IMG/VR virus record: IMGVR_UViG_3300032296_003307
Span: 204,740 to 268,739 of that record
Length of the DNA stretch: 64,000 nt
Direction: 5' to 3' (one strand)
Part shown: positions 3,263 through 16,343 of the stretch, piece after piece
Layout: each line of letters begins with the position of its first letter
How positions within the stretch are numbered: position 1 is the stretch's first letter
Program-made: the position numbers and the translations under genes
Notes under the pieces: generated by a model
Seen by the model: the letters and a program-made list of their open reading frames with translations, nothing else
What the model was told of the DNA's origin: nothing
Databases searched by the model: none

Positions 3263-3315
3263 TATTGTCTTTAAGACCTTAAGAAAACCCATCTCAAAAA
3301 GATGGGTTTTTTTTT
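3251..3315 (+). terminator. Intrinsic terminator with competing antiterminator
   Basis: Terminator AAAACCCATCT(3284-3294)/AGATGGGTTTT(3300-3310) plus a T9 run. Alternative 8-bp helix GAGATGGG(3251-3258)/CCCATCTC(3288-3295). Confidence 0.8.
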
Positions 3316-3322
3316 GGTTTAA

Positions 3323-3354
3323 TTTGGCAAATCAAAAATAAAGTTGTAATTTTG
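3323..3354 (+). promoter_or_regulatory. Bacteroidota housekeeping-sigma promoter (-33 TTTG / -7 TAnnTTTG) for the tRNA array
   Basis: TTTG at 3323-3326, 20-nt spacer, TAATTTTG at 3347-3354. Confidence 0.75.
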
Positions 3355-3415: not shown

Positions 3416-3487
3416 GGCCCCTTCGTCTATCGGCTAGGACATATCCCTTTCACGGATAAAAGACGGGTTCGATTCCCGTAGGGGCTA
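3416..3487 (+). tRNA. tRNA-Glu(UUC)
   Basis: Acceptor GGCCCCT/AGGGGCT, anticodon arm TATCC-CTTTCAC-GGATA, T-loop TTCGATT. Confidence 0.95.
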
Positions 3488-3493
3488 CAAAAC

Positions 3494-3628
3494 ATCTCCG
3501 TAACTGTTAAAACGGTGAGTGGGTAAATGATGGTTGATTGGTCTGACACTACTTATACTAGTTTGTAGAGAAAAGTCAGAGCACTAAACAAGTAATTTAC
3601 AAGATGGGTTCGATTCCCATCGGAGATT
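3494..3628 (+). ncRNA. tRNA-like RNA with a greatly extended central arm
   Basis: Acceptor ATCTCCG/CGGAGAT, T-arm ATGGG-TTCGATT-CCCAT, mini D-arm ACTG/CGGT, nested helices GTAAAT/ATTTAC, TCTGAC/GTCAGA and CTAC/GTAG. Confidence 0.7.
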
Positions 3629-3634
3629 CAAAAT

Positions 3635-3708
3635 GCCACCATAGCTTTAATTGGTAGAGCACCTGACTTGTAATCAGGGGGTTGGCGGTTCGAATCCGTC
3701 TGGTGGCT
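3635..3708 (+). tRNA. tRNA-Thr(UGU)
   Basis: GCCACCA/TGGTGGC acceptor, CCTGA-CTTGTAA-TCAGG anticodon arm. Confidence 0.95.
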
Positions 3709-3757
3709 CAAACTCAAGGAGTAATTAACCTTGAACTGTCAGGTTCGAAACTGACGA

Positions 3758-3849
3758 TTGATTATGGTGTAATAGGGCACACTGGCCTTAGTTGCTTCTT
3801 AACAGAAGTGGACGGGGCTGGGGATTGGGTTCGATTCCCTTTAATCAGC
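3758..3849 (+). ncRNA. tRNA-like RNA with an elongated anticodon arm
   Basis: TTGATTA/TAATCAG acceptor, D-arm GTGT-AATAGG-GCAC, long arm CTGGCC...GCTTCT-TAAC-AGAAGT...GGCTGG, T-arm GGG-TTCGATT-CCC. Confidence 0.7.
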
Positions 3850-3853
3850 AAAT

Positions 3854-4382
3854 GACCCCACAATTAACAGTAGTACTCGACTGTTATGGTGTGTGAACCC
3901 GACTTGAAGTCTTCGGGGCTATGGGGGATAGATACACTTGACGTGAAATTTGTATAACCTCTTATAAACGGGGTTAACCGACATGGGGAAGTTCAGTCGG
4001 GTACATCGGGAACAAGTATGACTGAGTCCCCCATTATGGATTAAGGGGGTTAGGGGCTTTAATTAGTCGTAATACAATCCACAAGTTGTAGAAACACTGG
4101 ACAATTCTACAATATACACTCTTCTTCCGAGTGAGACCAGACACGTAACTATGTGGTAGGGTGAAGATGTCCTGAGGGTAATATCGTTGTTAATTGTAAG
4201 GCTTATGGTCCGAAAGGATAAGTTGAAACCCAAAGGCACAACGGTATGATAGTACAGACCTACCTTGGATGGTTACTATGTTCTGACGAATCTTGGAAAT
4301 ATAGGTAGGGATATTAATTCGCCAACTATTAAAACTTAAAGGTGTTCCTATAATGGCGTAGGGATGATTCAACACCTTTTTT
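3854..4382 (+). ncRNA. Large structured non-coding RNA candidate (~520 nt)
   Basis: No credible ORF, GC content above the flanks, many helices including a long-range 10-bp pairing 3860-3869/4188-4197. Confidence 0.6.
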
Positions 4383-4386
4383 ACAT

Positions 4387-9686: not shown

Positions 9687-9691
9687 GTTTG

Positions 9692-10072
9692 TGGAGGTGG
9701 AGGGTATCGAACCCTCGTCCAGTCTACCTTGACTGTAAGGTACTACACGTTTAGGTTAACATTTGCTAATGTTCCAAACTTCACAATTCCCTTATTTTAT
9801 AGTGGTTCGGTTTACTGAGAACTAATCCTCCACTTGTTTCTTTTAAGATAGAAACCACACCTCTAAAGGACTTATGTTCCTAGGTTAATGTCCTCCCGAC
9901 CTGAGTGTTATAGCGATTAGGCTACAACTGAAGCCTCTTCACGGAACAAACCGCAAGCTGCCATGTTATTTAAAACGTTGCCGTCTAATTGGTTAAATCA
10001 GTTTTTAATGAGTTAATTCAGCTCATACGTGCACCTTACCTTCAAAAATACCTGTCAAATCCAGTCACCCCC
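9692..10072 (-). ncRNA. ssrA: tmRNA
   Basis: 5' GGGGGTGACTGGATTTGAC, 3' GAGGG-TTCGATA-CCCTC-CACCTCC-A with G3.U70. Tag ORF 9982-9917 encodes (A)GNVLNNMAACGLFREEASVVA. Confidence 0.92.
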
Positions 10073-14299: not shown

Positions 14300-16306
14300 T
14301 TAAACTTTTTCTATCTTAATTATTTCGTCAAATTTCAAGACGTAATTTTCACCTTCAATTACATTACCAACCAAGTATTCTTCTGAAATATAATCTTCAA
14401 CTTCATCTTGAATCGCTCTTTTAATCGGTCTGGCACCGAATGTTTCGTCAAACCCGACTTTGGCAATATGTTCAATTATGGTATCGTCAAATTCAAAGTT
14501 AAGTTTTAATTCTGTTAACCTGTCTTTAAGTTTTACTATTTCCAATTTAACAATTTTTTCAATTTCGGGTTGTTTCAAAGAGTTAAAAACAATAACTTCA
14601 TCAATACGATTTAAAAATTCAGGAGAGAAATAATTTTTCATTTCTTTTTGAAGAATTTGACGCTTGTACTCTTCTTGTGTTGAAGAGCTTGATGCGGTTG
14701 AAAAACCAATCTGAGTTCCAAAATCTTGTAATTTTTTAACCCCTAAGTTTGAAGTCATAATAATCAAACAATTTTTAAAGTTGATTTTTCTACCTAAAGA
14801 ATCAGTTAAATGACCTTCATCTAACATCTGTAACAATGTGTTAAAGATTTCTTTGTTTGCCTTTTCAACTTCATCAAACAGAATTACCGAATAAGGTTTG
14901 TTCTTAACTTGTTCGGTTAACTGTCCACCTTCATCGTAACCAACATAACCAGGAGGAGCACCAATCAATTTGGAAATGGTGTGTTTTTCTTGAAACTCAG
15001 ACATATCTACACGGATAAGATTGTCTTCACTACCAAAGATTTGTTTTGCCAATTGTTTTGCCAAGTGAGTCTTACCAACACCTGTTGAACCCAAGAAAAT
15101 GAATGAACCGATAGGTTTATTTGGGTCTTTAATTCCCAACCTATTTCTGCGAATTGATTTTGCAATTTTGGTAACCGCCTCATCTTGTCCAATAACTTTG
15201 TCCATCAGAGATTTGTCTAAGGCAATTAAGTTTGTTTTATCATCAACAGATATTTTAGAAACAGGAATTTTAGTCATAGAAGAAACGACATCCAAAACAA
15301 GTTCAGGTAAAATCTCGCGTTTCTTTTCTGACATTTCTATCTCATACCTTTCCTTTTCATTTTCTAACTTACTGGCAATTTTTTTCTCTTTGTTCCGTAA
15401 TTCTGCCGCCTCTTCATATTTTTGTCTTTTCACAACATCTTTTTTCTTTTCACTTATTTCTCTGAGTTGTGCGGTAAGTTTTTCTATGATTTCAGGTACT
15501 TTGGCCTCTACTTGTGCACGAGCACCAACCTCATCCATAATGTCAAACGCTTTGTCAGGAAACTCTCTGTCGGTAATGTATCTATCAGCCAAATTAACAC
15601 AAAGCTCAAGTACTTCATCAGAATAACTTACTTTGTGATATTCTTGATACTTTGTTCTTAGATTTTTAAGAATTAATAATGTTTCTTTTTTTGATGGTGA
15701 ATCAACAACTACTTTTTGAAATCTGCGTTCTAACGCACCGTCTTTTTCAAAGTTTGTTCTGTATTCATCTAGTGTTGTTGCTCCGATACATTGAATTTCA
15801 CCACGAGCAAGGGCGGGTTTAAATATATTAGAGGCGTCCATAGAGCCCGATGCGTTACCCGCACCAACTATAGTATGAATTTCATCGATAAAAACAATAA
15901 TTTCGGGGTTTTTTGACAATTCTTCAATAATTACTTTTAATCTTTCTTCAAACTGACCACGATATTTTGTTCCAGCAACAATTGATGTCATATCCAATAG
16001 AACAATCCTCTTACTCAATAAGTTACGTGGACAATCACCATTAAAAATTTTCATGGCGAGACCTTCAACAATTGCGGTTTTACCACAACCTGGCTCTCCT
16101 ATGATTATTGGATTGTTTTTCTTTCTTCTTGAAAGAATTTGAGCAATTCGTTGTATTTCACGTTCTCTACCAATTACAGGGTCTAATCTACCTTCTGACG
16201 CCAATTTTATTAGGTCTTTTGAGAAGTTATCCAATACGGGTGTAGATGAACTGTTACGTCTACTTTGCGGTTTTACATTTTCGTTGTCGTCCATTGATTC
16301 AATCAT
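14300..16306 (-). CDS. clpC: ClpC/ClpA-type AAA+ chaperone lacking the Clp N-terminal domain
   Basis: Two Walker A motifs (GEPGCGKT, GSTGVGKT), pore loops KYRG and GYVG, UVR-like middle domain and IGF ClpP-docking loop. Start MIES follows TATATTTG at 16318-16311. Confidence 0.92.
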   Translation of the reverse strand: MIESMDDNENVKPQSRRNSSSTPVLDNFSKDLIKLASEGRLDPVIGREREIQRIAQILSRRKKNNPIIIGEPGCGKTAIVEGLAMKIFNGDCPRNLLSKRIVLLDMTSIVAGTKYRGQFEERLKVIIEELSKNPEIIVFIDEIHTIVGAGNASGSMDASNIFKPALARGEIQCIGATTLDEYRTNFEKDGALERRFQKVVVDSPSKKETLLILKNLRTKYQEYHKVSYSDEVLELCVNLADRYITDREFPDKAFDIMDEVGARAQVEAKVPEIIEKLTAQLREISEKKKDVVKRQKYEEAAELRNKEKKIASKLENEKERYEIEMSEKKREILPELVLDVVSSMTKIPVSKISVDDKTNLIALDKSLMDKVIGQDEAVTKIAKSIRRNRLGIKDPNKPIGSFIFLGSTGVGKTHLAKQLAKQIFGSEDNLIRVDMSEFQEKHTISKLIGAPPGYVGYDEGGQLTEQVKNKPYSVILFDEVEKANKEIFNTLLQMLDEGHLTDSLGRKINFKNCLIIMTSNLGVKKLQDFGTQIGFSTASSSSTQEEYKRQILQKEMKNYFSPEFLNRIDEVIVFNSLKQPEIEKIVKLEIVKLKDRLTELKLNFEFDDTIIEHIAKVGFDETFGARPIKRAIQDEVEDYISEEYLVGNVIEGENYVLKFDEIIKIEKV

Positions 16307-16343
16307 ACCACAAATATACAACTATGTTTCATATTATCAACTA

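What the first reader, a model, noticed from the sequence alone, without database searches (positions are those of the whole stretch)
3494..3628. 135-nt tRNA-shaped RNA with a ~85-nt arm in place of the anticodon arm
Seen: a perfect 7-bp acceptor stem, a canonical T-arm and a small D-arm, but the centre is a long interrupted helix (GTAAAT/ATTTAC, TCTGAC/GTCAGA, CTAC/GTAG). Inference: RNase P and 3' processing would release it like a tRNA. It could be a tRNA mimic or nuclease decoy, a carrier for a small RNA, or a tRNA with a non-self-splicing insert. The intact pairing argues against simple decay.
Basis: partly seen in the sequence, partly recalled or inferred. Interest (0 to 1): 0.7.

Follow-up and report, generated by a model that had tools for sequence, protein, structure and literature searches.

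The report
tRNA-shaped long-armed RNA in phage
A giant freshwater T4-like phage carries, inside its tRNA gene array, a conserved 135-base RNA that keeps the top half of a tRNA but has a long hairpin where the anticodon arm should be; it is a new structured RNA family of unknown job, comparable to the unexplained "species 1" RNA of phage T4.

Summary
Window 3494-3628 folds into a 7-bp acceptor stem, a canonical T-arm, a small hairpin at the D position and a 78-nt interrupted central arm. It sits 5-6 nt from tRNA-Glu and tRNA-Thr in the tRNA array of a 269-kb T4-like phage. ARAGORN and Rfam do not call it.

It is not chance or decay. Two diverged homologues exist in other IMG/VR phage contigs (L112, L113/L114), and near-identical copies occur in at least seven freshwater or estuary metagenome runs. 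Seven to eight base pairs changed on both sides and stayed paired, in the acceptor, T-stem and two helices of the long arm. The closing helix, a linker and an internal loop are invariant.

Its 3' third is collinear with a tRNA, closest to tRNA-Lys(UUU) (19/23 identities; 0 of 1000 shuffles). The old anticodon hairpin is not conserved and U33 is lost, so it cannot decode. An intron reading fails.

Best reading: a tRNA-derived scaffold RNA cut out by tRNA-processing enzymes, with the conserved arm as the working part, probably binding a factor. That function is inferred. The closest known analogue is T4 rnaC, which is not a homologue and has no known role. No transcript ends were obtained. Interest is moderate to high.

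The parts
3416..3488 (+). Flanking tRNA-Glu(UUC). The spacer AAAAC (3489-3493) follows it.
   Evidence: ARAGORN; Rfam tRNA 56.5 bits.
3494..3500 (+). Acceptor stem, 5' strand (AUCUCCG).
   Evidence: Pairs perfectly with 3621-3627. In L113 it is GGCUCUA/UAGAACC: four pairs changed on both sides, one C.A mismatch.
3501..3502 (+). U8 A9, invariant in all homologues.
3503..3516 (+). Small hairpin at the D-arm position (ACUGU-UAAA-ACGGU). It is not a canonical D-arm.
   Evidence: Pair probability 0.92-0.99. It is replaced by larger hairpins of 26 and 29 nt in L112 and L113.
3517..3522 (+). Linker GAGUGG, invariant in sequence.
3523..3528 (+). P1 5' strand (GUAAAU), the closing helix of the long arm.
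   Evidence: Pairs with 3595-3600, probability 0.88-0.98. Invariant in all four sequences (helix 4).
3529..3541 (+). Internal-loop strand GAUG, then the P2 5' strand GUUGAUUG, then G. The sequence is conserved as GAKG-GUUGAKUUG-G.
   Evidence: P2 is a partly mismatched helix in the window and a continuous 8-bp helix in L112.
3542..3547 (+). P3 5' strand (UCUGAC).
   Evidence: Pairs with 3575-3580, probability 0.98-1.0. L113 keeps it through two double changes; L112 has two A.C mismatches.
3549..3568 (+). Apical hairpin: P4 CUAC (3549-3552), loop UUAUACUAGUUU, GUAG (3565-3568).
   Evidence: CUCC/GGAG in L113 gives one double change. The pairing has low probability in the single-sequence fold. 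UACUAG in the loop is shared by all copies.
3575..3580 (+). P3 3' strand (GUCAGA).
3582..3589 (+). P2 3' strand (CACUAAAC). It includes the former D-stem end, position 26 and the anticodon-stem 5' strand of the parent tRNA. It varies among homologues.
   Evidence: Collinear with tRNA-Lys of L105. Variants are CACUGAAC, CAAUUGAC and CAUUUACAAC.
3590..3594 (+). Internal-loop strand AAGUA, invariant. It derives from the former anticodon loop.
3595..3600 (+). P1 3' strand (AUUUAC). It is the former anticodon-stem 3' strand, now paired to a new partner.
3601..3603 (+). Three-nt variable region AAG, invariant.
3604..3620 (+). T-arm: AUGGG, UUCGAUU, CCCAU.
   Evidence: The first pair runs A-U, G.U, G-C across the three lineages.
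3621..3628 (+). Acceptor 3' strand CGGAGAU plus discriminator U. CCA is not encoded.
   Evidence: The discriminator is U, A and A in the three lineages.
3635..3709 (+). Flanking tRNA-Thr(UGU). The spacer CAAAAU (3629-3634) precedes it. The element is also followed by tRNA-Thr in L112.

Best explanation
The element is a gene for a stable, non-decoding, tRNA-derived RNA, and a member of a small, previously undescribed family in freshwater T4-like jumbo phages.

Shown:
- It keeps a tRNA 'top half': a 7-bp acceptor stem, a T-arm, and U8 A9.
- The anticodon arm is replaced by a roughly 78-nt four-helix arm (P1-P4). The closing helix of that arm reuses the 3' strand of the old anticodon stem.
- Helices covary across three lineages. 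A linker (GAGUGG), P1, an internal loop (GAKG/AAGUA) and one strand of P2 are fixed in sequence.
- The acceptor sequence and the discriminator are free to change.

Inferred:
- It is co-transcribed with tRNA-Glu and tRNA-Thr.
- It is cut out by RNase P at its 5' end and by the tRNA 3'-end machinery, and it receives CCA from the host enzyme.
- It accumulates as a tRNA-scaffolded hairpin RNA of about 138 nt.
- The acceptor/T-arm minihelix serves as a processing and stability handle. The sequence-conserved core and arm are the working part.
- The working part most likely binds a protein, either a host tRNA-directed factor or a phage factor, as a mimic or sponge rather than acting by antisense pairing.
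- It is probably not aminoacylated by a dedicated synthetase, because no acceptor identity set is conserved.
For: - Fold and statistics.
- Placement in the array with 5-6 nt spacers and no terminator between neighbours.
- Homologues: L112 at 161.7 bits and L113/L114 at 123.2 bits with model R2, whose seed alignment included them. They were first found by pattern scans, and each folds into the same architecture on its own.
- Covariation: RNAalifold recovers the same structure with 7 compensatory pairs. 94.5% of cells are paired. Seven pairs have both-side changes against 2.5 +/- 1.3 in shuffles (0/500) and 0-2 when partners are slid. A manual parse gives acceptor 4, P3 2, P4 1 and T-stem 1.
- Constraint in strains: 1 of 135 differences against 6.1% in non-tRNA sequence and 1.9% in tRNAs of the same contig. 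Only three variable sites were listed across seven metagenome runs.
- tRNA descent: 19/23 ungapped identity with a relative's tRNA-Lys(UUU) at the homologous offset, 0 of 1000 shuffles reaching 18 or more.
- Not decoding: no ARAGORN or Rfam tRNA call. The old anticodon hairpin is not conserved.
- No antisense target in the phage beyond chance 10-mers.
- Present in one true metatranscriptome as a 158-nt contig, with no cover of the flanking protein genes.
- Precedent: T4 rnaC in the T4 tRNA cluster has an acceptor-like stem, a long hairpin and a T-arm.
Against: - No read-level RNA data: mature ends, CCA and abundance are unverified. The one RNA-library contig has depth 3.8 and could be DNA carry-over.
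- Only three independent lineages exist, and nearly all compensatory changes come from one of them (L113).
- L112 has two A.C mismatches in P3. A strain variant, G3545A, also breaks a P3 pair.
- The element is absent from the arrays of several relatives with about 74% portal identity. It is possibly absent in one co-occurring strain (weak joint), so it is dispensable for the clade.
- No binding partner is identified. TROVE/Ro60, RtcB and CCA-enzyme genes are absent from the phage.
Confidence: 0.6

Rival explanations
1. It is an anti-defence decoy aimed at tRNA-directed host nucleases. The RNA mimics the body of a Lys/Thr/Asn-type tRNA and soaks up an anticodon nuclease or similar effector (PrrC, RloC or PARIS AriB type), protecting the real tRNAs.
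For: - It descends from a tRNA of the Lys/Asn/Thr group.
- It lies next to tRNA-Thr(UGU) in two lineages.
- Phage tRNA-Lys, tRNA-Thr and tRNA-Asn variants are known to neutralise PARIS, whose AriB cleaves exactly these host tRNAs (PMC11464382, PMC12409363).
- The neighbouring tRNA-like RNA at 3758-3849 is hypervariable between strains, as expected in an arms race.
Against: - The anticodon stem-loop, the part such nucleases cut and read, is gone.
- The host and its defence systems are unknown.
- The known counter-measure is a cleavage-resistant working tRNA, not a decoy.
Confidence: 0.15
2. It is a decaying tRNA pseudogene that took up an insertion. It is still cut out of the precursor but has no function.
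For: - Patchy distribution in the clade.
- Loss of U33, of the D-arm G18G19 and of the anticodon.
- Mismatches in P3 in L112 and in a strain variant.
- Possible presence/absence polymorphism.
Against: - Seven to eight pairs carry compensatory double changes, including in the new arm, which never belonged to a tRNA.
- Non-tRNA sequence blocks are invariant over lineages whose acceptor stems differ at 5 of 7 pairs.
- In L110 it is as conserved as the working tRNAs of the same array.
Confidence: 0.08
3. It is one part of a larger RNA assembly encoded in the array. It would work together with the adjacent tRNA-like RNA (3758-3849) and the roughly 535-nt structured non-coding RNA (3850-4386), as tRNAs are linked to GOLLD-type ornate RNAs in phage tRNA islands.
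For: - The element, tRNA-Thr, the 3758-3849 region and the 535-nt region occur together in G000 and in G011/L112.
- Phage tRNA islands are typical homes of GOLLD and ROOL, and tRNAs lie in the GOLLD linker (10.1101/2024.12.08.627333).
Against: - There is no Rfam match to GOLLD or ROOL.
- L110 keeps the element and the 535-nt region but lacks 3758-3849.
- Nothing shows a physical association.
Confidence: 0.1
4. It is a working tRNA carrying an insert, in the D region or as an intron, that is removed or tolerated.
For: A remnant anticodon-like hairpin, CUAAA-CAAGUAA-UUUAC, can be drawn.
Against: - That hairpin costs about 9 kcal/mol relative to the MFE.
- It has A33 and a C.C pair, and falls to 3/5 and 2/5 pairs in the homologues without compensation.
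- ARAGORN with intron search finds nothing.
- At 70-80 nt the insert is far too short for a group I intron.
- No RtcB ligase is found in the phage.
Confidence: 0.03

Closest known systems
Phage T4 species 1 RNA (rnaC, 139 nt) and species 2 RNA (rnaD), stable RNAs of the T4 tRNA gene cluster
   Same: - It is encoded inside the tRNA cluster of a T4-type phage, beside tRNAs with short spacers.
- It has about the same length.
- rnaC has an acceptor-like terminal stem, a canonical T-arm (CCGGGUUCGAAUCCCGG) and a roughly 70-nt long hairpin in the body.
- Its function is unknown after 50 years (PMC3014915, PMC12685909).
   Different: - There is no detectable homology. Model R2 scores the rnaC region at 14.5 bits, E 0.45, like any tRNA.
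- rnaC has no hairpin at the D position, has a second hairpin before the T-arm, and its acceptor stem has two U.U mismatches.
- The present element is recognisably derived from a class I tRNA.
Canonical tRNA (Rfam RF00005), in particular tRNA-Lys(UUU) of related phages
   Same: - Seven-bp acceptor stem, U8 A9, 5-bp T-stem with a UUCGAUU loop, and array position.
- The 3' 50 nt are collinear with tRNA-Lys of relative G006.
   Different: - There is no anticodon loop and no D-arm with G18G19.
- The variable region is 3 nt, and a 78-nt arm replaces the anticodon arm.
- It is not called by ARAGORN or Rfam.
tRNA-like domain of tmRNA
   Same: It has an acceptor stem plus T-arm, a reduced D region, and a long helix leaving where the anticodon stem would be. 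The phage also encodes a true tmRNA.
   Different: - There is no G3.U70 (C3-G70, or C.A in L113), no pseudoknots and no tag reading frame of note.
- The only Rfam tmRNA match is a 17-nt T-arm stretch at 13.3 bits.
Bacterial Y RNA-like YrlA (tRNA mimic bound by Rsr/Ro60)
   Same: It is a non-coding RNA that combines a tRNA-like module with a long protein-binding helix.
   Different: - The topology is the reverse. As I recall, the ends of YrlA lie in the long helix and the acceptor-like stem is capped.
- The phage has no TROVE/Ro60 gene.
- Rfam YrlA matches are noise: 16.9 bits against a gathering score of 69.
Engineered 'tRNA scaffold' RNAs (a foreign hairpin placed in the anticodon arm of a tRNA to obtain processing and stability in bacteria). 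This comparison is from my own knowledge and is not checked against a paper here.
   Same: The design is the same: an intact acceptor/T top half with the cargo hairpin replacing the anticodon arm.
   Different: This one is natural and conserved, and its D-arm is replaced as well.

Membership tests
tRNA (RF00005) | Recognised by tRNA covariance or heuristic models | tested here: not met
   There is no ARAGORN call, even with introns allowed and lowered thresholds. There is no Rfam tRNA hit at E <= 10.
tRNA (RF00005) | Seven-bp acceptor stem and 5-bp T-stem with a T-loop | tested here: met
tRNA (RF00005) | Five-bp anticodon stem with a 7-nt loop, U33 and purine 37 | tested here: not met
   The remnant loop CAAGUAA has A33. 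Its stem is not conserved (4/5, 4/5, 3/5, 2/5 pairs) and has zero pair probability.
tRNA (RF00005) | D-arm with G18 G19 | tested here: not met
   The hairpin loop is UAAA, and the hairpin's size and sequence vary.
tRNA with intron (group I, or bulge-helix-bulge) | Removing the insert restores a cloverleaf with an anticodon loop, and intron hallmarks are present | tested here: not met
   ARAGORN -i finds nothing. The arm is 78 nt, there is no Rfam intron hit, and there is no RtcB in the phage.
T4 rnaC / species 1 RNA | Stable RNA gene inside a T4-type phage tRNA cluster, with an acceptor-like stem, T-arm and long hairpin | tested here: met
   Stability of the RNA itself was not tested.
T4 rnaC / species 1 RNA | Sequence and structure homology to rnaC | tested here: not met
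   R1 gives 16.6 bits, E 0.14. R2 gives 14.5 bits, E 0.45, on L096. Both are at the level of unrelated tRNAs.
tmRNA (RF00023) | tRNA-like domain with G3.U70, a tag reading frame and pseudoknots | tested here: not met
   Position 3:70 is C-G. Rfam gives only a 13.3-bit T-arm fragment. The true tmRNA is elsewhere, at 9689-10072.
YrlA / Y RNA | Match to RF02553 and a partner Ro60/Rsr (TROVE) gene | tested here: not met
   RF02553 scores 16.9 bits against a gathering score of 69. No TROVE gene is in the genome, and the control genomes were positive.
Conserved structured RNA (generic) | Homologues with compensatory base-pair changes above controls | tested here: met
   The set is small: four sequences from three lineages.
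Conserved structured RNA (generic) | Discrete transcript with defined ends | tested here: inconclusive
   One 158-nt contig of depth 3.8 in a metatranscriptome.

The most novel reading that the evidence does not exclude
Freshwater T4-like jumbo phages use the tRNA top half as a natural expression scaffold. This element would be one of a set that also includes the hypervariable 3758-3849 RNA and the 8-bp-acceptor RNAs upstream of the window, whose bodies differ completely between relatives. Each would be cut out by the tRNA-processing machinery and would display a different 'cargo' arm. Together they would form a diversifying toolkit of protein-binding RNAs aimed at host tRNA-directed immunity or at translation factors.
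Probability: 0.2. Interest if true: 0.8.

Novelty: new variant of a known kind. Interest (0 to 1): 0.6.

Why it matters
Phage tRNA islands are increasingly seen as counter-defence loci, yet the non-tRNA RNAs in them have no known function. These include T4 species 1 and 2 and the GOLLD and ROOL RNAs.

This element gives a compact, covariation-supported family with three clear features:
- a traceable evolutionary origin in a class I tRNA;
- a visible remodelling step, in which the old anticodon-stem strand was captured by a new partner to build a long arm;
- a conservation pattern that points to the arm and core, not the acceptor end, as the functional surface.

That makes the question of what tRNA-shaped non-tRNAs do in phages directly testable by processing assays, probing and pull-downs. 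The element is also a natural counterpart of the tRNA scaffolds used to express recombinant RNAs.

Tried and rejected
- Intron-containing tRNA: ARAGORN with introns finds nothing, and the remnant anticodon hairpin decays among homologues.
- Repeated or mobile insert: the element is single-copy in the 269-kb genome. The insert has no significant similarity to any of 133 tRNAs.
- Known RNA families: there are no Rfam hits, including at E <= 10.
- Cultured phages: BLAST against 50,697 records finds only T-arm fragments.
- Bacterial genomes: the first structural pattern gave no hits. The second gave 22, about the number I estimate for chance, and none scores with model R2.
- Arrays of relatives G001, G006-G010: only ordinary tRNAs score. 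In G001, tRNA-Glu is followed by a small ORF instead.
- Exact-seed scans that found nothing because of single substitutions in the homologues.
- Neighbour protein 2128-2922 as an anchor: it gave only two remote short contigs.
- Antisense targets in the phage: only chance 9-10-mers.
- Small peptide: a 13-codon AUG..UAG frame exists in the arm, but both listed strain substitutions in it are non-synonymous and there is no other support. I read this from the sequence.
- Partner genes: TROVE, RtcB and a CCA-adding enzyme are absent from the phage.
- CRISPR-repeat mimic: there is no CRISPR-DR hit on the element.
- Specific tRNA-Lys parentage for the whole family: it holds for the window copy only. 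The L112 copy is equally close to Asn, Thr and Lys.

Full report
**Context.** The window is the last 64 kb of a 268,739-bp IMG/VR virus record, estimated complete. It encodes a T4-type portal, large terminase and Gp23 capsid protein. Its nearest cultured relatives are only 35-37% identical in the portal: a Microcystis phage and Flavobacterium phages. The genome has 30 canonical tRNA genes and a tmRNA. The element lies in an array on the + strand, between tRNA-Glu(UUC) at 3416-3488 and tRNA-Thr(UGU) at 3635-3709. The spacers are AAAAC and CAAAAU. A bidirectional terminator lies upstream at 3281-3313, and no terminator separates the three genes.

**Observation.**
- The minimum-free-energy fold is a cloverleaf whose central arm runs from 3523 to 3600: -38.4 kcal/mol, z = -3.1.
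- The two 6-bp helices have pair probabilities of 0.88-1.0.
- The hairpin at the D position is not a true D-arm: its loop is UAAA, with no GG.
- ARAGORN does not call the element even with introns allowed. Rfam's tRNA model does not match at E <= 10.

**Origin.**
- A BLAST hit in two related phage records turned out to be a normal tRNA-Lys(UUU).
- From the 3' strand of the D-stem to the 3' end, the element is collinear with that tRNA. AGAGCACUAAAC is identical. Three loop bases differ (UUU to AAG). UAAUUUA is identical. The last stem base is C instead of G. The variable loop is shortened. The T-stem is identical.
- Over the 23 nt before the variable loop the identity is 19/23 at the homologous offset. 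None of 1000 shuffles reached 18.
- The acceptor stem differs from the tRNA-Lys genes at four positions, and all changes keep or improve pairing, including G1-C72 to A1-U72.
- The 76 nt that replace the D-arm resemble no tRNA and occur once in the genome.
- So the element is a remodelled class I tRNA. For homologue L112 the nearest tRNAs are Asn, Thr and Lys about equally. Lys is therefore the best guess rather than a certainty.

**Relatives and conservation.**
- Near-identical copies occur in a JGI contig (L110) and in seven DNA or probably-DNA freshwater or estuary runs. Only three variable sites were listed in 135 nt: 3536, 3545 and 3586.
- In L110 the element differs at 1 of 135 positions. 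The working tRNAs of the same contig differ by 1.9% and non-tRNA sequence by 6.1%, although that divergence is concentrated in a hot spot.
- Two diverged homologues came from pattern scans of IMG/VR.
  - L112 is 147 nt, in a 195-kb contig whose portal is 78% identical. There the element lies between tRNA-Leu and tRNA-Thr.
  - L113/L114 is 162 nt.
- Each homologue folds on its own into the same architecture.
- Arrays of relatives with about 74% portal identity lack the element.
- No cultured phage and no bacterial genome has it.

**Structure test.**
- On the model-fitted alignment, 94.5% of cells pair. Seven pairs changed on both sides, against 2.5 +/- 1.3 in shuffles (0/500) and 0-2 when partners are slid.
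- A helix-by-helix parse gives:
  - acceptor AUCUCCG/CGGAGAU becomes GGCUCUA/UAGAACC (four double changes, one C.A);
  - P3 UCUGAC/GUCAGA becomes UUAGAC/GUCUAA (two double changes);
  - P4 CUAC/GUAG becomes CUCC/GGAG (one double change);
  - the first T-stem pair runs A-U, G.U, G-C.
- Against the structure, L112 has two A.C mismatches in P3, and a strain variant breaks one P3 pair.
- The alternative fold that keeps the old anticodon hairpin is about 9 kcal/mol worse. It decays from 4/5 to 2/5 pairs with no compensation, while its 3' strand stays invariant together with its new partner GUAAAU. The long arm, not the old anticodon arm, is what selection maintains.

**What is conserved.** Invariant in sequence are U8 A9, the linker GAGUGG, P1, the internal loop GAKG/AAGUA, the 5' strand of P2, the 3-nt variable region and the T-loop. 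Free to vary are the acceptor sequence, the discriminator (U, A, A), the size of the D-position hairpin and the 3' strand of P2. From this I infer two things:
- The acceptor stem is needed only as a helix, serving as a handle for processing and stability.
- The core and arm carry the function.

Because no acceptor identity set is conserved, a dedicated aminoacylation seems unlikely. No antisense target exists in the phage genome, so a protein or other structured partner is more likely than base pairing.

**Expression.** One true metatranscriptome (X29) holds a 158-nt contig covering 3509-3633 at depth 3.8. That run shows no cover of the flanking protein genes. This is compatible with a stable RNA but proves nothing. 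The contig continues from 3633 through AA into 3489-3517, a head-to-tail junction that I cannot explain. It could be a tandem copy in a strain, a circular or concatenated RNA, or an assembly artefact. The other 'RNA' runs are probably DNA.

**Comparison with known systems.** The nearest known thing is T4 species 1 RNA (rnaC).
- It lies in the T4 tRNA cluster, is 139 nt long, and folds into an acceptor-like stem, a long hairpin, a second hairpin and a canonical T-arm.
- Reviews and a 2025 paper state that the roles of rnaC and rnaD are unknown (PMC3014915, PMC12685909).
- It is an analogue, not a homologue.

tmRNA, YrlA and intron-bearing tRNAs each fail defining tests. Phage tRNAs for Lys, Thr and Asn are known counter-measures to the PARIS nuclease (PMC11464382, PMC12409363). 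That makes a decoy role thinkable, but the part such nucleases read is missing here.

**Verdict.** The finding is real, and the structure is supported by covariation from a small set. The element is a new family of tRNA-derived, tRNA-shaped non-coding RNA in a clade of freshwater jumbo phages. Processing and function are inferred, not shown.

Noticed in passing
window 3758-3849: A second tRNA-shaped RNA of 92 nt, with an acceptor stem, D-arm, T-arm and a central arm of 6 bp + internal loop + 8 bp + UAAC loop. ARAGORN calls it tRNA-Leu(UAG), or Val with an intron. Rfam gives no hit. Strains that are otherwise almost identical differ here at about 20 positions, including U-A to C-G double changes that keep the inner helix. 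Other strains lack the segment entirely (joint 3711 to 3854 in X5 and X12; L110).
   Followed up: partly
window 3850-4386: A roughly 535-nt non-coding stretch inside the tRNA array with no Rfam match. It is 85% identical in contig L112 and 94% in L110. The consensus fold has 163 pairs, 11 of them with compensatory changes. There is a variable hot spot at 3929-4028 and a terminator-like hairpin at the end. It is a candidate large structured RNA, in the kind of place where GOLLD and ROOL RNAs are found.
   Followed up: partly
L002 17045-18376 (genome 203045-204374, just upstream of the window): Four more non-canonical tRNA-like genes. A is 135 nt with an 8-bp acceptor stem and is conserved with covariation in five related phages. 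B and C share an 8-bp acceptor (UAGUCAGG/CCUGACUA) and a T-arm, and carry about 40 nt where the anticodon loop (B) or the whole anticodon arm (C) should be. In relatives the same ends enclose completely different bodies. D is 90 nt with 25 nt in the D-loop.
   Followed up: partly
window 3489-3633 in run X29: A metatranscriptome contig joins the 3' spacer of the element through AA to its 5' spacer, giving a head-to-tail junction at depth 3.8. A weak joint 3489 to 3630 in DNA run X2 may be a strain without the element. Both end points lie in the A-rich spacers.
   Followed up: no
window 9689-10072 (- strand): A phage-encoded tmRNA, 99.5 bits over the full-length model.
   Followed up: no
window 3281-3354: A bidirectional terminator at 3281-3313. 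TAATTTTG at 3347-3354 fits the Bacteroidota -7 promoter element TAnnTTTG as I recall it. This hints at a Bacteroidota host and at the start of the array transcript.
   Followed up: no
window 14300-16321 (- strand): A 673-aa ClpB/Hsp104-type double AAA+ protein encoded by the phage: AAA_2 at 228 bits, plus AAA_lid_9 and ClpB_D2-small domains.
   Followed up: no
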